A stretch of DNA of 64,000 bases from Schizochytrium sp. TIO01 (GCA_004764695.1 SMSO01000032.1:8154483-8218482); one strand, 5' to 3'. Positions 43,227-51,700 are shown, counted from the stretch's first letter. A program made the numbers and translations. The notes: generated by a model not told the origin, from the sequence alone.

Positions 43227-44155
43227 AAAGAAAGTAGAAATAGACTCGCAGCTCCTTGCCAGGCGGCGCGGCGGGAGCGCTGGAAACGCAGCACTGGTCC
43301 AAGGTCGCCGGAAAACGCCAAGGCCAGAGAGGTAGCTGGCTAAACGAGGAGCTCTCCACCCAGTGGGTGTTTTACTCTCAAGCGGTGGCGCTTGCGAAGA
43401 AGCGGATTTCAAATTCATTGGTCATTTTATTCGTTCATCCTTTTGGTGATCCACCCACCCTGCAACTCATCCATCAGCTACGTTGGCCAGAAGCTGAAAG
43501 GAGGACACAGTATTGAGCACGCGGGGACCTCGCGACGTTGCCAAGGGCCTCTTGCGCGACTATATCGCAGGCAGTAGACTCTCGCTTGCTTCCGCACAGC
43601 TCCAAAAGGCCCTTCTTGAAAAGCGGAAGAAGGCGAAACATATTAGAGGAATTCTTAGGAGACAAGTAAGTAAAACTCTAAGAAGGGAGTGCGTGCTCTC
43701 TTTGACGGATCGATTGATCAATTGTTATTATTGGTATTGTTGAGCTGGTGTTGAACGTCAATAATTGGGTACCTTTGAAGTATTCGTGGCGAACAAGTGC
43801 AGAGGGTTCTACGTTGTTTGCAAACGGTTAAGACTGTATAAGGTTGTACTTTGACAGACGCTAGTCAAACATTTCTTGAAGGAGCTTGGTGACTTAGGAA
43901 CAGTCCTTGGAAAAATTAACTACTGGATCACTTGAAGCGCTCACGGGGTGCGCAAAAGCTATCTGTTTGTCTGTCAAATTCCTTGGTATTGTTGGTGAGG
44001 TTTGTGTGTAAGCCAATCTGTCCACGGGAGGAAGGAGATAGATTTATTTCTCTGTAATCCCTTCGGTTGAGTCAAGTTCCTAGATCGTGGCAAAACTCAA
44101 CCAAGGTCTCCGACCCCTGGAAAGGGGTGCGGAGGGCCACTATAAAAAGGGCCCA

Positions 44156-47100
44156 ATGCAGGACGGAGGAATGGGTCAATATGAAAAGCCAAATCACACT
44201 GATAAAGGCCCAAAACAGAATGATGATGCCGACAATGACCTTGCAAATATTGATTATGATGTTGAGTTAGGTGACGTAGATTACGACGAGGATGCCATGT
44301 CACGCTCTTCGTCAGTTGTGTCAACAACCAGCTCAGCTCGCCGAAGACGCAGAAGCAGCAGTGGGAGCAGTATGCACAGCGTTGTTGAGGTGCCAATAGT
44401 TGATGAACTTTTTGAGAGCACAACTGTACTTCGGGAAAATGCTCGCCTTGCAGAAATCACTCGTGCTCAATCAGGAGGTTTTGTAGGTGCCAATGGGTTT
44501 TCAGATTCACAGCCTTTGGCAAACGACAAACAATTACAAGGTCTCGCACCACAGGGTGGAGATCATGAGGCCTTGACAAAAGTTGGGCATTCTATTGCAG
44601 AACATGACGGTAACGGTGATATAGGTGGCGATGCACAAGAGGGAGAAGTAGCTAGCGAGTCCACCGGGAATGACTCGCGACGGGGTGGTTTTTTTATGCT
44701 GCAATCTCGCCTCGCAGCTCTCTTTGTAAATCCTTATGTAGAAATGACAATGGCGGTAACGAGTCTCATGTACATGTGTTTGGTCTATGTCCAGGTTTCT
44801 CTAGCACTTCCTGGTGCCATAGATGATCTCAATATCTGGCGTGGATTTTCACTTGCAAGTATTGTTCTTCTTTGTGTATTCTCAACCGATGTAATTTTGC
44901 GCATGTTTGTGTTTGGCCGTTCGTACTGGGCTACTCTTGCAAATTGCATCGAGTTCGCCATTGTTATGGCTGCTCTCGCACTCGAAGCCGTTGTGTATGT
45001 GCGTATCTCTAGGGCAACGGAATCTGACCGTCCTGGCGTTAATGCAGTGACTATCATCAATAGTCTTCTGAAGCTCCTTTTATTTTTGTTCCGATACCGT
45101 CGCTTTGAATACGTATTCTCCTTCAAGTATATTCAAGAGCAAGCTCGCCTATCCAGTGCCCATGATGGACTTACGGCCTCGGATCGTTTGTTAGACCTTC
45201 TCCGAAGTTTTCGTCATAAATATCCTTTGACTACCCGCGAGGCACAAGAGATTACTTGGGTGAGTTTCTTAATTGCTTCGAGAAGACTGTACAGCAGCGC
45301 AGCTGTACCCTCAACAGAAGATCACCAAACCGAAAAGCTCTTCGAAGGTCTTGATGAAGATACCACAAATTGGTTATTAGCAACTTATTCTCGTGTACAA
45401 TTACAACAAGATGATAATCGTGCAGCCCTGGGCTCACCAGAGCTCACACCCTCTGGTTCCTCAAGGCTTAGTGATCTTGGTGAGAGTGAAAGTGAATTAA
45501 TGCCAACGTTTTCCCTGAATGATGGTGGAGAGCATGGAGATGATCCTGAGTATATGACATCTCTTCCCAGAGACGAACCAGACTCAGAAAGGGAAGCCCA
45601 TTTGCACCAAGACTCGCTTGATGCGGCGCCGGCCCTTAGTTCTGCTCATACAGCTATCCCTCCTAGTTCACCACGGGGACCATCTGCAGTGTTGAAAGAT
45701 AATAGCAGCCATGCTGGAAATCTCAACAGGGCAAGTCATACAGACACTGAGCTGGTCCTTCCTGTGTTGCCTACTGTAGACTCCGCAAAGAGTGTTTTGG
45801 GTGCTGCATCGACACGGACAGAAGGTAGCTCCGAGCATCCGGAGGAGATGAAGTCACCATTACTACTTCCAAGTGAGGCTGGAAAGAATCATTACCCACC
45901 TGCATCTGATCTTGGTCGGCATATTTCTGGTGGCTCTGTTGGTGTTCAAGCTCGCGATTTGTCACAATTTATTGAGGCTTTACATCGGGAAACATACTCA
46001 CCAGCGGGTACCCAGACACGAGTTCTTGGCGCATCTACAGCTCCAATGCGTGTGCAAGATCTGGTAGGCCGCAAGTTCCCACCAGCGAAAAGCTATACTG
46101 ATCTTCGAGAGATCGGCTCGGATATGGACCCCAATGTGCCTTTGTCTCCAGTTCAATCCCGGACTATGGCAATTAATAGTAGACGGGTTGTCGCAGGGGA
46201 TACTGAGGAGCTTTCAACTTTTCATGATCGACAAGTGAGTGGCGAGATGAGTGACTCTGTGACATCAAGATCAGCAAATATTGCTACCCAGAGACCCGAA
46301 GCGAAATCATTCGAAGACGACGAAGGTTTATCACCAACTACACCTCGGAAGCGGTCTCAATTAAATGTATGCACTACCATGTCCAAGTTTGAAGAATGTG
46401 ATGAGGATGACGATCATAACTCACGGGTCAATGACCATGGTGAAGGCCAAGAACGGCCGATAGAAACTCTTACTTCGCGTGGGGCACAACGTTTGGATGA
46501 AATCAGTCCTCATGAACATGGGGTTGTTCAGGTGGACCAGGCTGACGATGATGACGATAATGATTCTGTAATCAGTACACATGAGAATATAGTTGAGAGT
46601 ACTGATCGAGCCGGTGTTGCTAGCCATGCTAGAAATTCTAATGATATTGGAGAAGATGATCTTCCTTCCCCACCTGCACCACCCTTGGTGTTATCAGATC
46701 ATGCAAGGGATGCGGATGATATCACAGGAGGTGGAGATGAAGACGAATGTGCCAGGGGCTTGGCCGAAAGTGACTTCACTGATGAACTTATGCCTCATCA
46801 AATAGAATCCCCTGGATTAAGGGCAATGCCTCCAGTTCTGCAAACTCTCACTGCTCATAGTCGCAGCTCAAGCACAAGCGTTCCAGGCCAGCGGCGTTAT
46901 TCGCAACGAAAACACTTTACTGATGCAGTGCATAGTAGTCGCGCAGCAGCGAACGTGACGTGGTTTGATACCCCTAATGGAACAGGAGTACACCATCAGC
47001 GTACATACACGACTGGAGATGGGCCCAATAATATTGCGCAGAACAGCTTTATGGAAAACCCTCATCGTGACACTCCTGCTCACCAAATGGAGCTAGTAGA

Positions 47101-48790
47101 TGCTGACGGAGTGGATAGGCTCAAACTTCTGGCAGGAGAGCTGAACAAATTGAAGGCTCTTCGTTGGACACAGAGTGGGATTGATCATATCAATGATACT
47201 ATGGATGAATGGGACTTTGATGTCTTTGAAGCTGATGCCTTCTCAGCAGGCCGACCTCTTTCTTTGGTGTTTTTAGGAGCACTTCGCAAGAACCGCATCT
47301 TTGAGCAATTTCGTGGTTTGCGGTACAGCACAATTGTTTCAATGATCAGCCATGTAGAAAATGGCTACCGGGTGACAAACTCTTATCATAACAGGATCCA
47401 TGCCGCAGATGTTGTACAAACAACCCACTACTTTATGACCCACACACTTTTGCGAAACGCAATCACGACACAGGACATTTTTTGTGCTCTTGTTGCATCA
47501 GCAATTCATGATTTTCAACATCCAGGCATGAATAATGCATTCTTAATTGCTACTGGTGATAAATTGGCCTTGCGTTATAATGATCGAGCTGTACTCGAAC
47601 ACATGCATGTCGCTGCTGCCTTCGAGATGATGCGGACTAAACGATGTGATGTCTTGAAGGCAGTTGGCTCAACTGATCGTTATTTGGAAGCTCGAGAGAC
47701 AGTTATCCAAATGGTTCTAGCAACTGATATGAGCCACCATTTCGACGGACTGGAACAGTTCAAAACGGAGGTGGTAGGTTACTTTGACCGACTTCGCCAG
47801 AAGCGGCGCAAGGGCCATAATAACACTGTTACTGGCTCGAGTCTAGACTCCATGCTCTCTGGGGATGCAAACATGGACTCTGAAATTGGAACGGGGATAA
47901 CCTCGCCAGATACTAATGGCGGAGGCGATGACAATGCTAGTCACTCTGGAGATGTCACAGACCATGTCGCCCCAATCGAGGTACGCCGTACATTGCTGAA
48001 AACAACTCTCCATTGTGCAGATGTATCAAACCCTGCCAAAAACCCACGCCTTTGCCAACGCTGGGCAATGCTTGTTCAAGAAGAGTTTTTCCGCCAAGGT
48101 GATCGGGAGCGCGATGCGGGACTCAAGATCAGTACATTCATGGACCGTCGTAAGCCTGCATTTCCAAAATCTCAGATCGGCTTCATTACCATTATTGTTC
48201 GTCCCCTGTTCAATTCGTACTGTCAATTTCTTTCGACTTTAAAGCCCCAGGTGGATTGGTGTCTGTCTGCAAATCTGTCACATTGGGAGCAACGCCAAGC
48301 TGACGAAGAGCAAGGCTTGGTGGGGCCTGGTCTTGGAGGCTACGCGCATCATGGAATGATTTCGACTACAACATCACCAGGTCTAGGTCCAATTTCTCCC
48401 TCCTTTGGCCCTCTTAATAGTAGTAGTAGTATTACTGGAGGTCAGCATAGTGGTACCATACATGGAAGTTCAGGCATGCAGCAACGTCGCAAGTCTTTTC
48501 GTTACGTTTCAAGTCGCATTAAATCTTCTCTCACACGATCGCAGAGCAGTGCAGTAAGTGGGGATGTTTTGCAGAAACAACAGCGTCGACTTGGGAAAAA
48601 TGGCTTAAAGCTTGACCTCGACATGCTTGTTTCTCCCACCTCACCAGATACCCAGCACCCATCAACCGCATCAACGTTTTCTCCAACAACACCAAACGCT
48701 CGTCCAGTGAGCTCTCCAGCTCACGCCGCCTTGAAACGTGCAGCAACCGATGCGGCACTTAACGTAGGCAATCCTCGATTTCTGTCATAA
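44156..48790 (+). CDS. Class I 3',5'-cyclic-nucleotide phosphodiesterase with an N-terminal 4-TM voltage-sensor-like domain
   Basis: The catalytic domain (~47180-48300) has all class I motifs: WDFDVF, YHNRIHAADVVQ, AIHDFQHPGMNN, RYNDRAVLEHMH, LATDMSHHF, LHCADVSNP, EEFFRQGD.E and SQIGFI. Four hydrophobic helices lie at ~44729-45112. First ATG is 44156; the frame is open from 44084, so the true 5' end is uncertain. Confidence 0.92.
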   Translation: MQDGGMGQYEKPNHTDKGPKQNDDADNDLANIDYDVELGDVDYDEDAMSRSSSVVSTTSSARRRRRSSSGSSMHSVVEVPIVDELFESTTVLRENARLAEITRAQSGGFVGANGFSDSQPLANDKQLQGLAPQGGDHEALTKVGHSIAEHDGNGDIGGDAQEGEVASESTGNDSRRGGFFMLQSRLAALFVNPYVEMTMAVTSLMYMCLVYVQVSLALPGAIDDLNIWRGFSLASIVLLCVFSTDVILRMFVFGRSYWATLANCIEFAIVMAALALEAVVYVRISRATESDRPGVNAVTIINSLLKLLLFLFRYRRFEYVFSFKYIQEQARLSSAHDGLTASDRLLDLLRSFRHKYPLTTREAQEITWVSFLIASRRLYSSAAVPSTEDHQTEKLFEGLDEDTTNWLLATYSRVQLQQDDNRAALGSPELTPSGSSRLSDLGESESELMPTFSLNDGGEHGDDPEYMTSLPRDEPDSEREAHLHQDSLDAAPALSSAHTAIPPSSPRGPSAVLKDNSSHAGNLNRASHTDTELVLPVLPTVDSAKSVLGAASTRTEGSSEHPEEMKSPLLLPSEAGKNHYPPASDLGRHISGGSVGVQARDLSQFIEALHRETYSPAGTQTRVLGASTAPMRVQDLVGRKFPPAKSYTDLREIGSDMDPNVPLSPVQSRTMAINSRRVVAGDTEELSTFHDRQVSGEMSDSVTSRSANIATQRPEAKSFEDDEGLSPTTPRKRSQLNVCTTMSKFEECDEDDDHNSRVNDHGEGQERPIETLTSRGAQRLDEISPHEHGVVQVDQADDDDDNDSVISTHENIVESTDRAGVASHARNSNDIGEDDLPSPPAPPLVLSDHARDADDITGGGDEDECARGLAESDFTDELMPHQIESPGLRAMPPVLQTLTAHSRSSSTSVPGQRRYSQRKHFTDAVHSSRAAANVTWFDTPNGTGVHHQRTYTTGDGPNNIAQNSFMENPHRDTPAHQMELVDADGVDRLKLLAGELNKLKALRWTQSGIDHINDTMDEWDFDVFEADAFSAGRPLSLVFLGALRKNRIFEQFRGLRYSTIVSMISHVENGYRVTNSYHNRIHAADVVQTTHYFMTHTLLRNAITTQDIFCALVASAIHDFQHPGMNNAFLIATGDKLALRYNDRAVLEHMHVAAAFEMMRTKRCDVLKAVGSTDRYLEARETVIQMVLATDMSHHFDGLEQFKTEVVGYFDRLRQKRRKGHNNTVTGSSLDSMLSGDANMDSEIGTGITSPDTNGGGDDNASHSGDVTDHVAPIEVRRTLLKTTLHCADVSNPAKNPRLCQRWAMLVQEEFFRQGDRERDAGLKISTFMDRRKPAFPKSQIGFITIIVRPLFNSYCQFLSTLKPQVDWCLSANLSHWEQRQADEEQGLVGPGLGGYAHHGMISTTTSPGLGPISPSFGPLNSSSSITGGQHSGTIHGSSGMQQRRKSFRYVSSRIKSSLTRSQSSAVSGDVLQKQQRRLGKNGLKLDLDMLVSPTSPDTQHPSTASTFSPTTPNARPVSSPAHAALKRAATDAALNVGNPRFLS

Positions 48791-51700
48791 GACTCCCCGC
48801 TTCCTTTTAATGTCAAGAATAATTTTGTAAGTTGTATAGTAATAAAAAGCGCATTTTCGACGTTCTTTTCTTTTTCGTGTTTTATAATTTTTGTTCTCAG
48901 ATGTTCTATCGCTGCATGTCAAGATAGCTTGTTCTCTAGTTTCGTTACTTAACATTTTATAAGAATTATACAATCTTACACATTATAGTATTCAACTAAA
49001 TGAGCAAGCAGTCTTTGGAGTACAGACAACATCTTGCAACTTTTCATCAATAGACTTTGTCATGATTGCTCATATTTAATGGGTAACGTGAAGTCCAACT
49101 AACATCCATACGCTACGACAGATGATACAAAATAAAAAACTTGATCTTCATGTATTCTTTTGCATGATTGAAATGAAACGAACAGTGTATCTTAGAGGTT
49201 CGGGGAATTCTGTATGGTATACTACACTCGCAGTTATGTGTTTTAAAGAAAATTCATTAGAAAAGAAGCACGTGTTTCAATATTTACTTTGATTGTCCTT
49301 TTGTTTTACAGGAAGCTAATGAAACGTATTCACTTTGTTATTGTGGGGGGAATAATTATTTTCAAGGAGCAGTGTTGGACGATGCCTTTTCATTTCTAAA
49401 TATATTAGAAGTTCAAATTACTACATATATATACAAGTAAAAACAGAAAGAGTAAAAATAATGTTGATTTAAATTGTGCGCTCCATTGAGGTGCCTAAAA
49501 ACTACATTTTTGCAACTGCCTTGGTATAAGTCTAGCTTGAAAGAAGTTCAAAAATTTAAATGAAGTGCAAATCAACTTAACAGGAACCTTTGTGAAATCA
49601 TTGCTGAATGATAAAGTAAACCTCTCAGTTGCATGTCATTAAAAATAAACAATTCACGAAGGTTCTCTATATTTAGAATGGGTGCAGAATACTGCGCTTT
49701 AAACAATGTATTTCAGAGTTATCAGCAGACTATCCGAGAATAATAATGTGAATATTATGTAGAATATTCCGGGACTGATGTAAAGCATCCACATCGAAGT
49801 TGGTCTACATTAGCAATGTAGTAACTGTACATTTAAAAAAAGCAATATGCCTTTAAATCAAAAGCAATCGAAAGCTGTCAAGTATGCATTCGGTAAATGC
49901 TCTCGTATGATATGAAACAATTATGACGGTGTGCTCCAGCTGTTAAATGCACTAAGGCATCACTACCATTCAAATCACTTTAATAGAGAATTGAATATTC
50001 TTCGAGAGGGAATAAGTACCGCAAATACCCCTCTTTATATTTCTTTATTTGTTAGCAAACATTTCACGAAGTTTTTAGAAATCAATCACTTGCACAAATT
50101 GGCTGAGTCGGCATATGAAAATTCTTCTGTGACGTTTTCAAAAGAGCAAAACAAGGTGAACGCTCGTACTAAACATGTTTCTTTTGCATTTTTTACATTT
50201 TATTTTATTTACCGAAATGTGTAGTCAGTTGAGTAAAGTTCGTTTGGGAACTCTCAACCTTTCCCTGTATTAATACGAGAAACGATAGTTTATTCTTTAA
50301 ACTCTAAAACTAAAAAAAATAAATATTGGATTGACTTTTAATGGTAGACCAACAGTAAAACAAGATGTTTGAACATGCGGTCAGAGGAAGGAGCCAGATC
50401 TGCAGATCATATATTCAATCAACAACTTATGTATTAGAAGCTTGAGTGATAGGTTAACCTATGTTGTTACACAGCAAATATAAGAAAATAACAAAACAAG
50501 AGCTACCACATTTTGAGCCAAAATTGAACTGCCCTTTGGACTAGCTACATAAAAATGATCCAGCATTTTGAGATATATAGCTGTATGAAAACTTCTTCAA
50601 CTACTCTCTCAGCTAGTATTTTATGTAATCTGCAAAGCACTAGATGGAAATTGTTGTAAGGTATTTAGAGTTGGCGAGGATAGTTGACACCTTACCAAGA
50701 ACTATATGAGATTGTTTGGTAGAGAATACTCACCTTAAATTCAGTCCTTGTTCTTTCTGCCCTAAACATAACCAACAAAGCAGGCTTTTAGTACTACCTA
50801 CCTGAGGTTAACTTCAATGCTAATAGGTCGAATAGAAAACTATCAAAGGCCTGCAGGGTCGTACTAAAATATTAATCAGGAATAATTTTACCAACGTTGG
50901 GAAGTTAGTAAGCCAACAATTCTGAGAAGATAAGCTAGATAAACGAAACGATAAAATCAGGCTTGAGAATATGTAGTCGCTGTCGTTTGAGGAAATACAA
51001 TACCTAGGTAGTGGACGTTTCTTGTAAATCTGAATAGGGCTTCATCATTTCCGAAGCAGAGCTGCTTGTCCCTTCTTTTCTTGGCTCAGAACAGAGGGAG
51101 CTTTTTTGTAGACTATACAAGTACTAACAAATCGAAGTACTTGGTTCTGGAGATTACCTTCGAAAGAAAGCCCTGTAAGTCTTAATCCAAATTATAATAT
51201 TTTTACTAAATTCTAAAAAAGTTACTCCTTCCTAGTATGCCTCGAGCCATAGACTGTTTTATGCCTTGTGTCTTATTGGTTATTGAAAAATAAATGCTCT
51301 TTTGATTAGGTTATTCGTGTTTAGTTGATCCTTGCTTACTGGGACATACGGGTGTCATAGCAGCACTGTGCAGTTTTGTTTTGACGAGGAAGCTGATAAC
51401 ACTACTAGGATGCCTTCCTGCTTGCTATGATAAACTTGTCGATGTTCTTCTTCCAGCTTGAAGGTTGAATTGTCCTTGGAATCCACGTAACTTGGGCGTC
51501 GTAGAGAATCGCTAGACGTGATGCCAAAGCAAAAAGGACGGAAATCAAACTACAATAAAATGCTGCTGCCTGCTTTTTGGACCACGTGTAGAAGAAGTGC
51601 TTCGTGAGTTGCATCGTCATCTAGTGCTTTCCTCTAACTGCTTAAAACATTTCGCGAATTTGATGGTACTAACTATTTAAGTGGCCTTGTAATGATTTCA

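What the first reader, a model, noticed from the sequence alone, without database searches (positions are those of the whole stretch)
44729..48300. Candidate voltage-sensing phosphodiesterase: a pore-less S1-S4 voltage-sensor-like domain fused to a class I PDE
Seen: in one uninterrupted ORF, four hydrophobic helices precede an intact PDE catalytic domain. They are S1 NPYVEMTMAVTSLMYMCLVYVQVSL, S2 FSLASIVLLCVFSTDVILRMFVFG, S3 RSYWATLANCIEFAIVMAALALE and S4 INSLLKLLLFLFRYRRFE. Established: voltage-sensor domains have an S2 F-x-x-[DE]-x-x-x-[RK] motif (charge-transfer Phe plus countercharge; cf. FMLDLGLRIFAYG in Ciona VSP and FMMEIIFKLFVF in Hv1), an aromatic S2-S3 loop, an N-x-x-[DE] at the start of S3, and basic residues in S4. 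All of these are matched here. No S5-P-S6 pore follows, and the Hv1 hallmarks (S1 Asp, RxWRxxR) are absent, so it does not look like a channel. The layout parallels voltage-sensing phosphatases (VSD plus PTEN-like enzyme), but with a cyclic-nucleotide PDE as effector. Inference: membrane potential (or pH or lipids) could control cAMP/cGMP breakdown, e.g. in flagellated cells. I know of no characterised VSD-PDE, though uncharacterised relatives may exist in other SAR genomes. Caveat: the S4 charge pattern is degenerate (K...RYRR; only one clean RxxR), so the domain may be a membrane anchor that has lost voltage sensing.
Basis: partly seen in the sequence, partly recalled or inferred. Interest (0 to 1): 0.88.

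Follow-up and report, generated by a model that had tools for sequence, protein, structure and literature searches.

The report
Voltage-sensor domain fused to phosphodiesterase
This marine protist gene joins a voltage-sensor-type membrane domain, without any ion pore, to an intact cyclic-nucleotide phosphodiesterase; it belongs to a small protist family I found in no paper, some of whose members have a fully charged sensor, although this copy has lost most of its sensing charges.

Summary
One intron-free ORF (44087-48790; likely start ATG 44156) encodes four helices at the stated coordinates, then an intact class I PDE (Pfam E 2.8e-75).

The four helices are a true voltage-sensor domain (VSD):
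- Best PDB sequence hit is the Ci-VSP VSD (E 0.003).
- A family profile that includes this sequence hits Cav/Nav voltage sensors (single-repeat E 5.6e-13), S1-S4 only.

The gene belongs to a rare VSD-PDE family: 18 representatives among 1.84 billion proteins. Members such as the one from Platysulcus tardus carry five S4 arginines and pass Pfam Ion_trans. All share a conserved module after S4.

This copy's clade keeps the charge-transfer residues (F265, D268, E289). It has only one S4 lysine (K329), and Gln replaces the outer S1 acid. Its own voltage sensitivity is therefore doubtful: I estimate about 0.27, against about 0.5 for the charge-rich relatives.

Eight paper searches and two recent VSD reviews mention no VSD-PDE. 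No function was measured. The scan had not noted this family before. Two unchecked notes describe other VSD fusions in this genome.

The parts
43250..44155 (+). Probable 5' leader of the mRNA. The 5' limit is approximate: contigs start between about 43245 and 43415.
   Evidence: One contig per run in 4 runs of 4 studies starts here and runs colinearly into the ORF. There is no ATG in 906 nt, with a chance of about 6e-7. GC is 0.49 against 0.33-0.35 in the flanking DNA.
44156..48790 (+). Coding sequence of the VSD-PDE protein: 1544 aa from the first ATG. The frame is open from 44087.
   Evidence: ORF listing. The database copy P0001 starts at this ATG. It is the first ATG of the transcript. No joints appear in the contigs, so there is no intron.
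44339..44413 (+). N-terminal cytosolic motif: an Arg5-Ser3 cluster followed by SVVEVP..DELF. The SVVEVP-type part recurs in several relatives.
   Evidence: The motif is located. Variants (GSVVEVP, GSLVEID, SSVVEVA, GSV[VI]TY) occur 60-80 aa before S1 in P0003, P0002, P0123, P0006, P0008 and P0122. A role as a phosphorylation site is only an inference.
44729..44803 (+). S1 helix. E219 is kept at its inner start. Q236 sits where most non-clade relatives have Glu or Asp (the outer countercharge).
   Evidence: E219 is invariant in A1.
44846..44917 (+). S2 helix with F265-x-x-D268-x-x-x-R272, the charge-transfer-centre motif.
   Evidence: The motif is kept in most family members. It aligns to the FxxExxxK of Cav S2 in the profile match.
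44918..44986 (+). S3 helix with N286-x-x-E289.
   Evidence: N286 is invariant in A1 and nearly invariant in A2. It aligns to the NxxD of Cav/Nav S3.
45056..45109 (+). S4 helix. Its only in-helix basic residue is K329. A cytosolic-end cluster R336, R338, R339 follows.
   Evidence: Family alignment. K329 sits in the most conserved basic column of S4. The other four periodic basic columns, which are Arg in P0125 and P0037, are G, A, T/I and S here.
45170..45409 (+). Conserved cytosolic post-S4 module of about 80 aa with three predicted helices. Signature: ..ER.L.LL....KYPL / ..W....IAS..LY / D.ET..WL..TYS.
   Evidence: Present in all family members. It also lies in front of the PDE domain of chytrid and blastoclad multi-TM PDEs. 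The model gives low to medium confidence here. There is no Pfam match.
45410..47203 (+). Long low-complexity linker of about 600 aa. The same linker is only about 50 aa in P0125.
   Evidence: Sequence. It shows 6 nonsynonymous and 9 synonymous differences from a related strain. The corresponding stretch in the P0125 model is disordered.
45908..46003 (+). Conserved island inside the linker: R.[VIT][ST]G...G[LV]...D[LIV]..[LF].
   Evidence: Found in 12 listed relatives, all from the clade that holds the window protein. Function unknown.
47204..48256 (+). Class I cyclic-nucleotide PDE catalytic domain, intact. It carries a low-complexity insert of about 55 aa at roughly 47795-47970.
   Evidence: Pfam PDEase_I E 2.8e-75. 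Catalytic residues are invariant in A3. The closest solved relatives are PDE4D (E 4e-60), then PDE4B/A/C, PDE8A, PDE1B and PDE7A. It shows 0 nonsynonymous and 8 synonymous differences from a related strain.
48841..48846 (+). AATAAA hexamer, a likely poly(A) signal.
   Evidence: The contigs of all four runs end 3-25 nt after it, at 48849-48871.

Best explanation
The gene encodes a membrane-bound phosphodiesterase that is closest in sequence to cAMP-type PDEs. Its membrane part is a true four-helix voltage-sensor domain with no pore. S4 runs on into a conserved cytosolic three-helix module. A long disordered linker then leads to the catalytic domain, which faces the cytosol.

The gene is a member of a small protist VSD-PDE family. 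The deep-branching members carry four or five S4 arginines and probably link membrane potential to cyclic-nucleotide breakdown.

In the labyrinthulomycete-like clade that holds this gene, the sensor has been stripped of charge. Only K329 remains in S4, and the outer S1 acid has become Gln. The inner charge-transfer residues (F265, D268, E289, R272) are kept under purifying selection.

My commitment: in this protein the VSD is most likely a static or at best weakly voltage-dependent scaffold, with K329 parked at the charge-transfer centre. It would hold the PDE at the membrane in one state of the ancestral switch. Activity would then be tuned through the post-S4 module and the N-terminal Arg/Ser cluster.

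Shown here: the architecture, the fold, family membership, the charge loss, the conservation and a colinear mRNA-like contig. Inferred: the position of K329, the locked state, cAMP as substrate, and any regulation.
For: VSD identity:
- phmmer of the window fragment puts the Ci-VSP VSD first (E 0.0027).
- The AlphaFold2 model has pLDDT 76-92 over the helices.
- Foldseek's top hit is Ci-VSP 4g7v (prob 1.0, target TM 0.78).
- The family profile A2 matches Cav/Nav VSDs, E to 6e-38 overall and 5.6e-13 for one repeat, over S1-S4 only.

Family:
- phmmer over 1.84e9 proteins finds 18 relatives.
- Ion_trans above Pfam's cut-off plus PDEase_I occurs in P0037, P0125 and P0129. Ten of 16 aligned members match Ion_trans at E up to 10.

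Charge loss:
- Alignment. On the PDE tree the five-Arg members branch deep, and the window sits in a clade (support 99) whose members have 2, 1 or 0 in-helix charges.

Selection:
- 0 nonsynonymous and 9 synonymous differences in VSD, module and PDE, against 10 and 9 elsewhere; Fisher p 0.0098.

Transcript:
- One 5.4-5.6 kb contig per run in 4 studies spans the leader to 48849-48871 without joints. The leader has no ATG, and AATAAA lies at 48841.

PDE:
-.
Against: - No charge movement or enzyme activity was measured.
- A single basic residue can still give weak voltage dependence. From my own knowledge, BK channels and TRPM8 work with very little gating charge.
- S4 is strongly conserved within the clade. 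That could mean a working sensor rather than a scaffold.
- I could not read model coordinates, so the position of K329 relative to F265, D268 and E289 is an inference.
- The register between this S4 and those of Shaker or Ci-VSP is uncertain. The phmmer alignment pairs K329 with Ci-VSP R226.
- The sequencing runs are only guessed to be RNA.
- The root of the family tree is weakly supported (SH-aLRT 83), so the order in which charges were lost is not proven.
Confidence: 0.5

Rival explanations
1. This protein is itself a working voltage-controlled PDE. Movement of S4, with K329 and perhaps the R336/R338/R339 cluster carrying the charge, would be passed through the post-S4 module to the catalytic domain. 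Membrane potential would then set cAMP or cGMP breakdown, for example in the flagellated zoospores.
For: - The VSD fold and the charge-transfer centre are intact.
- S4 including K329 is invariant across the six clade members, and the VSD shows no nonsynonymous change between strains.
- The genome encodes many voltage-gated channels, including four-domain ones, so the cell is likely to be electrically excitable.
- Charge-rich relatives have the same architecture.
Against: - Four of the five periodic S4 charges and the outer S1 countercharge are gone.
- From my own knowledge, lysine is a poorer gating charge than arginine.
- The linker between module and PDE is about 600 disordered residues long. 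This argues against tight mechanical coupling of the VSP kind.
Confidence: 0.27
2. The VSD has been re-purposed as a sensor of something other than voltage, such as a lipid, pH or a metal ion. TRP channels use their S1-S4 'voltage-sensor-like' domain in this way.
For: - The helical bundle and its polar core are conserved while the charges are lost.
- The module shared with chytrid PDEs sits behind a different, non-VSD-looking membrane domain there. This suggests that interchangeable sensors feed one output module.
Against: No ligand-site motif was found and there is no direct evidence of any kind. This reading rests on analogy only.
Confidence: 0.15
3. The fusion is an artefact: two adjacent genes, a pseudogene, or an assembly error rather than one expressed protein.
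For: - The run type is only a guess.
- The linker is long and of low complexity.
Against: - A single 4.7 kb open frame.
- The same colinear contig in four studies, with shared ends, an ATG-free leader and a poly(A) signal.
- The same architecture in more than ten relatives, including transcriptome-derived ones.
- Purifying selection on both domains.
Confidence: 0.03

Closest known systems
Voltage-sensing phosphatases (Ci-VSP, TPTE/TPTE2)
   Different: The effector is a class I cyclic-nucleotide PDE, not a PTEN-like phosphoinositide phosphatase with a C2 domain. The connection is a conserved helical module plus a long disordered linker, not a short phosphoinositide-binding linker. This copy has one S4 lysine, where Ci-VSP has four sensing arginines.
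Hv1 proton channel and TMEM266
   Same: Both have a VSD with no pore domain, and in both S4 continues as a cytosolic helix.
   Different: The window protein has no RxWRxxR in S4 and no mid-S1 Asp (sequence). It carries a large enzyme domain. No coiled-coil dimerisation segment was identified.
VSDs of four-domain Cav/Nav channels (Pfam Ion_trans, S1-S4 half)
   Same: The family profile matches all four repeats of Cav and Nav channels. This includes the FE at the start of S1, the outer S1 Glu, the S2 FxxExxxK, the S3 NxxD and the S4 Arg repeats.
   Different: There is no S5-P-S6. The window sequence alone does not reach the Pfam threshold, and its S4 repeats are lost.
Rhodopsin-phosphodiesterase (Rh-PDE) of choanoflagellates (from my own knowledge, not tested here)
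   Same: An N-terminal membrane sensor domain is fused to a C-terminal class I PDE, so a physical stimulus at the membrane controls cyclic-nucleotide hydrolysis.
   Different: The sensor there is a light-driven eight-helix rhodopsin, not a four-helix VSD. No sequence relation of the membrane parts was seen.
PDE4 (closest solved catalytic domain)
   Same: The catalytic domain is most similar to PDE4D (E 4e-60), then to PDE4B, 4A and 4C. By eye the post-S4 module recalls the UCR1 and UCR2 helices.
   Different: The UCR resemblance failed its tests: hhalign probability 5.8% and no PF18100 match in 16 members. PDE4 is not an integral membrane VSD protein.
Chytrid and blastoclad multi-TM PDEs (annotated 'PDE7A-like', e.g. 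P0016, P0048, P0073)
   Same: They share the conserved juxtamembrane module directly upstream of a related PDE domain.
   Different: Their 5-6 membrane helices show no S2, S3 or S4 sensor motifs. They form a separate, well-supported clade on the PDE tree.

Membership tests
Voltage-sensor domain superfamily (S1-S4 half of Pfam Ion_trans PF00520) | Four-helix S1-S4 bundle fold | tested here: met
Voltage-sensor domain superfamily (S1-S4 half of Pfam Ion_trans PF00520) | Significant sequence or profile similarity to known VSDs | tested here: met
   The window fragment alone hits Ci-VSP at E 0.0027. The family profile including it hits Cav/Nav VSDs with single-repeat E 5.6e-13. Relatives found with the window fragment (P0125, P0127-P0130; P0037 came from the PDE-domain search) pass Pfam's Ion_trans cut-off. 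The window fragment alone gets no Pfam Ion_trans hit.
Voltage-sensor domain superfamily (S1-S4 half of Pfam Ion_trans PF00520) | Charge-transfer centre: S2 aromatic plus acidic residue, and an S3 acidic residue | tested here: met
   F265, D268 and E289 are present, together with R272 and N286. These columns are conserved in the family.
Voltage-sensor domain superfamily (S1-S4 half of Pfam Ion_trans PF00520) | S4 with basic residues at every third position (the gating charges) | tested here: not met
   Only K329 remains in the helix. The other four periodic columns are uncharged here, although they are Arg in P0125 and P0037. The family meets this feature; this copy does not.
Voltage-sensor domain superfamily (S1-S4 half of Pfam Ion_trans PF00520) | Charge movement in response to voltage | not testable with these tools
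   This needs sensing-current or voltage-clamp fluorometry recordings.
Voltage-sensing phosphatase (VSP) | PTEN-like phosphatase plus C2 domain after the VSD | tested here: not met
   Pfam finds only PDEase_I in the cytosolic part. The protein works on the same design principle but is not a member.
Class I cyclic-nucleotide phosphodiesterase (PF00233) | PDEase_I domain above threshold, with the His/Asp metal ligands, the catalytic His and the substrate Gln | tested here: met
   E 2.8e-75, 253.6 bits against a cut-off of 24.8. In A3 numbering H80, H84, H120, D121, D193, D291 and Q342 are invariant columns that the window sequence occupies.
Hv1 voltage-gated proton channel | S4 RxWRxxR and the mid-S1 selectivity Asp | tested here: not met
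   S4 reads INSLLKLLLFLFRYRRFE, and S1 has no Asp.
PDE4 upstream conserved regions (PF18100) | Detectable homology of the post-S4 module to UCR1/UCR2 | tested here: not met
   hhalign probability 5.8% over 13 columns. No PF18100 hit in 16 members at E up to 10. The PDE4 alignment used had low diversity, so this is a weak negative.
VSD-PDE family defined here (VSD + post-S4 module + PDE) | All three parts in one chain, in this order | tested here: met
   Local HMM of VSD plus module: window protein E 2.7e-74, but it was one of the 19 seed sequences. Independent support is phmmer E 1e-62 to 4e-4 to the other members. PDEase_I lies downstream.

The most novel reading that the evidence does not exclude
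The VSD-PDE family is a second natural class of voltage-controlled enzyme. In its charge-rich members (the Platysulcus tardus protein P0125, and P0037, P0130, P0128), S4 movement would gate cyclic-nucleotide hydrolysis directly, turning membrane potential into a cAMP or cGMP signal without any ion flux. The gene in this window would be the charge-poor labyrinthulomycete branch of that family, either a weak sensor or a locked one. The probability given is for the family-level claim. For this copy alone I put voltage control at about 0.27.
Probability: 0.5. Interest if true: 0.9.

Novelty: new variant of a known kind. Interest (0 to 1): 0.75.

Why it matters
In the two recent reviews I read, voltage-sensing phosphatases are the only enzymes listed as controlled by a voltage-sensor domain. 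A natural VSD-PDE would show that the VSD can drive a second, unrelated enzyme. It would also give cells a direct route from membrane potential to cAMP or cGMP.

The family offers a natural series of sensors with 5, 4, 3, 2, 1 and 0 charges on the same output. That makes it a ready-made experiment on how much charge a sensor needs.

A voltage-gated PDE could also become a tool for controlling cyclic nucleotides by voltage.

The post-S4 module is shared with chytrid membrane PDEs. This hints at a common output adaptor that can accept different membrane sensors.

Tried and rejected
I therefore could not fetch the DNA of relatives or cut them by reference. Alignments for the remote tools had to mix the window fragment with full-length or naturally truncated relatives.
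- Word-index protein searches with the membrane region of the window protein and of P0125 found only the queries themselves (plus, for P0125, an isoform of it).
- Pfam on the window fragment alone gave no Ion_trans hit.
- A search of the window's own genome found no second copy of the VSD-plus-module unit.
- The idea that the post-S4 module is a PDE4 UCR1/UCR2 homologue was not supported.
- Complex prediction on the PDE domain against the post-S4 module gave ipSAE 0.00, and the tool's verdict was 'no answer'. This is evidence neither for nor against contact.
- The full-length model of P0125 has pTM 0.58 and a disordered 50-residue linker, so it predicts no defined arrangement between the domains.
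None were co-located at E up to 1e-5.
- ESM Atlas: the nearest named clusters are all Ion_trans, but their scores are below 0.9, so this is only a lead.
- Readings rejected: an Hv1-like proton channel (motifs absent); a channel subunit with a pore (no S5-S6); and an apicomplexan-style generic multi-TM anchor (the fold and the profile say VSD).
- The run type in the reads tools is a guess, and only contigs were available. Transcript ends are therefore inferred, not shown.

Full report
**What is in the sequence**

A single open frame runs from 44087 to 48790 on the + strand. The S2 motif F265-x-x-D268-x-x-x-R272, the S3 motif N286-x-x-E289 and the S4 residues K329 and R336-Y-R-R are all present. 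Numbering counts from the first codon of the ORF; subtract 23 for Met1 numbering.

The C-terminal part is an intact class I phosphodiesterase. Pfam PDEase_I matches aa 1100-1390 with E 2.8e-75. All metal-binding and catalytic His/Asp residues and the substrate glutamine fall in invariant alignment columns. The closest solved relatives are PDE4D (E 4e-60), then PDE4B/A/C, PDE8A, PDE1B and PDE7A. That gives a weak hint toward cAMP as substrate. No hydrophobic segment follows S4.

**Gene model and expression**

The scan's earlier notes describe the genome as an Aurantiochytrium-like thraustochytrid. I did not test that.

In four sequencing runs from four studies, a single contig of 5.44-5.56 kb lies colinearly on the window. 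It runs from about 43245-43415 to 48849-48871 with no joints, and nothing covers 49000-49399. The tool only guesses that these runs are RNA. Three independent features nevertheless fit an mRNA:
- The 906 nt between the contig starts and the first ATG of the ORF (44156) hold no ATG at all. The chance of that is about 6e-7.
- GC is 0.49 in this leader against 0.33-0.35 in the flanks.
- An AATAAA sits at 48841, which is 3-25 nt before the contig ends.

I therefore read one intron-free transcript, with translation starting at 44156 and a 1544-aa product. That is also the form held in the protein database as P0001.

A related strain (run X7) differs at 28 listed positions inside the ORF. In the VSD, the post-S4 module and the PDE domain together there are 0 nonsynonymous and 9 synonymous changes. 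Elsewhere there are 10 and 9 (Fisher p 0.0098). Both domains are under purifying selection. The VSD-plus-module part contributes only one of those changes.

**Is the four-helix block a voltage-sensor domain? Yes.**

- The window fragment alone (aa 192-438), searched by phmmer against all PDB sequences, puts the Ci-VSP voltage-sensor domain first (4g80 E 0.0027; 4g7v E 0.0036). The alignment covers S1-S4. Human TPTE2 comes third.
- An AlphaFold2 model built on a 7-sequence alignment has pLDDT 76-92 over the helices.
- Foldseek's best hit is Ci-VSP 4g7v (probability 1.0, target TM-score 0.78), followed by TPC, Kv, Nav and Cav sensors.
- A profile of ten family members that includes the window fragment matches Cav and Nav channels with E down to 6e-38 overall and 5.6e-13 for a single repeat. 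Only profile positions 23-160 (S1-S4) are matched.

Pfam alone does not see Ion_trans in the window fragment, so the call rests on the other tests.

**The family**

An exhaustive phmmer search of 1.84 billion cluster representatives with the window fragment found only 18 proteins at E up to 1e-3. The family is rare.

- P0037 (found in the PDE-domain search), P0125 and P0129 carry Pfam Ion_trans above the curated cut-off (E 9.9e-12, 1.1e-13 and 1e-8), matching only profile positions about 2-122 of 241. They also carry PDEase_I.
- P0127, P0128 and P0130 are truncated predictions with Ion_trans that run into the start of a PDE domain.
- Ten of 16 aligned members match Ion_trans at E up to 10, and 14 match PDEase_I.
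- Named sources are few. P0125 is from Platysulcus tardus, which from my own knowledge is a deep-branching stramenopile. P0121 and P0139 are MMETSP transcripts. P0126 is filed under Batrachochytrium salamandrivorans BASA81, which may be contamination given its nearest relatives.
- This genome has a single copy.

**What the family alignment shows**

S4 has five periodic basic columns.
- P0125 and P0037 fill all five with Arg.
- P0130 has four and P0128 three.
- P0006, P0008, P0009, P0122, P0129 and P0131 have two.
- The clade of the window protein (with P0003, P0121, P0002, P0123 and P0124) has one, and it is always Lys.
- P0139 has none.

The column that holds K329 is the most conserved basic column. 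It is the innermost of the five and is basic in 18 of 19 sequences.

The same clade, and P0139, have Gln where ten of the thirteen other members have Glu or Asp at the outer end of S1. The profile alignment to Cav channels places this column on the outer S1 glutamate. So outer charges and their countercharge were lost together.

The inner set survives: E219, F265, D268, R272, N286 and E289.

On a tree of the PDE domains, the VSD-PDEs group together only weakly (SH-aLRT 83). The five-Arg members branch deep. The window lies inside a well-supported clade (99) whose members have 2, 1 or 0 charges. This fits secondary loss of charge, but the root is not secure.

**The rest of the protein**

S4 continues as a long helix into a conserved module of about 80 residues with three predicted helices (window 45170-45409). 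Every family member has it.

My local HMM also finds this module directly upstream of the PDE domain in chytrid and blastoclad PDEs, including proteins labelled Allomyces, Batrachochytrium and Synchytrium. There it follows five or six membrane helices that show no sensor motifs. The module thus looks like a shared output adaptor behind different membrane domains.

By eye the module recalls PDE4 UCR1/UCR2, and the catalytic domain is closest to PDE4. That idea failed hhalign (probability 5.8%) and Pfam.

Between module and catalytic domain lies a linker of about 600 low-complexity residues here. It is only about 50 residues, and predicted disordered, in P0125. This argues against rigid VSP-like coupling. 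A test of module-to-PDE contact gave no answer.

**How it most likely works**

For the family, the simplest reading is a voltage-controlled PDE. S4 movement would be passed through the post-S4 module to the catalytic domain. I put this at about 0.5 for the charge-rich members.

For this gene, the loss of four of five S4 charges and of the outer countercharge, with the charge-transfer centre retained, points to a sensor that is locked or only weakly voltage-dependent. K329 would probably sit at the charge-transfer centre. The VSD would then serve as a conserved membrane scaffold in one state of the ancestral switch (0.5).

The rivals are:
- a working weak sensor (0.27);
- a sensor re-purposed for another stimulus (0.15);
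- an artefactual fusion (0.03).

None of this was measured. The position of K329 is an inference, because model coordinates could not be read.

**Comparison with what is known**

The design principle is that of voltage-sensing phosphatases. The effector (PDE instead of PTEN-C2) and the connection differ, so the protein is not a VSP. It is not Hv1-like, since it has no RxWRxxR and no S1 Asp. From my own knowledge, rhodopsin-PDE is the nearest case of a membrane sensor fused to a class I PDE.

Eight full-text searches found no paper with any phrasing of a voltage-sensing, voltage-gated or voltage-dependent phosphodiesterase, and none linking VSDs to PDE domains. Two recent reviews of voltage sensors list channels, Hv1, TMEM266, the sperm Na+/H+ exchanger and VSPs, and never mention a phosphodiesterase. 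The paper library lacks most subscription journals, so absence is not proof.

**Context from this scan**

Unchecked earlier notes describe other VSD fusions in the same genome: an NCKX exchanger with a VSD, and a voltage-sensor adenylyl cyclase. I did not verify them. My quick look found no cyclase and Ion_trans matches lying together. The genome does hold at least 79 Ion_trans matches, including four-domain channels, so the cell is probably electrically excitable.

**Limits**

- The single exhaustive search had to use the degenerate window sequence rather than a profile, so the family census is a lower bound.
- Only assembled contigs of runs of guessed type were available.

Noticed in passing
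window 43250-44155: The 906-nt leader upstream of the start codon contains no ATG on the coding strand (chance about 6e-7). Its GC content (0.49) is like that of the coding region, while the flanking DNA is at 0.33-0.35. This is an unusually long 5' UTR kept clean of upstream AUGs.
   Followed up: partly
window 45170-45409; also P0048 aa 450-614, P0073 aa 338-530, P0016 aa 429-502 and other chytrid PDEs: The conserved post-S4 module also precedes the PDE domain in chytrid and blastoclad fungal PDEs. There it follows 5-6 membrane helices without sensor motifs. It may be a common juxtamembrane output module for membrane-bound PDEs. It has no Pfam family.
   Followed up: partly
window 45908-46003: There is a conserved island in the otherwise free-running linker (R.[VIT][ST]G...G[LV]...D[LIV]..[LF]). 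It occurs in 12 listed relatives of the same clade and is absent from the compact charge-rich members. Function unknown.
   Followed up: partly
window 44339-44413: An Arg5-Ser3 cluster is followed by a motif (SVVEVP..DELF) that recurs 60-80 residues before S1 in several relatives. It could be a kinase site plus a docking or sorting motif. This is an inference only.
   Followed up: no
G000:C34:2265141-2265458, C33:4244561-4244983, C13:2892606-2892974, C30:3016926-3017498, C30:5297517-5297984: Other places in this genome match only the S1-S4 half of Pfam Ion_trans, inside open frames of 400-923 aa. They could be further pore-less VSD proteins such as Hv1, VSP or other fusions.
   Followed up: no
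window 47795-47970: A low-complexity insert of about 55 residues interrupts the PDE catalytic domain, between the helix after the LATDM motif and the HCADVSNP motif. Relatives have shorter inserts at the same place.
   Followed up: no
window 44529: A related strain (run X7) has an in-frame 3-nt deletion here, in the N-terminal low-complexity region. All four listed substitutions in that region are nonsynonymous, so this part evolves freely.
   Followed up: partly
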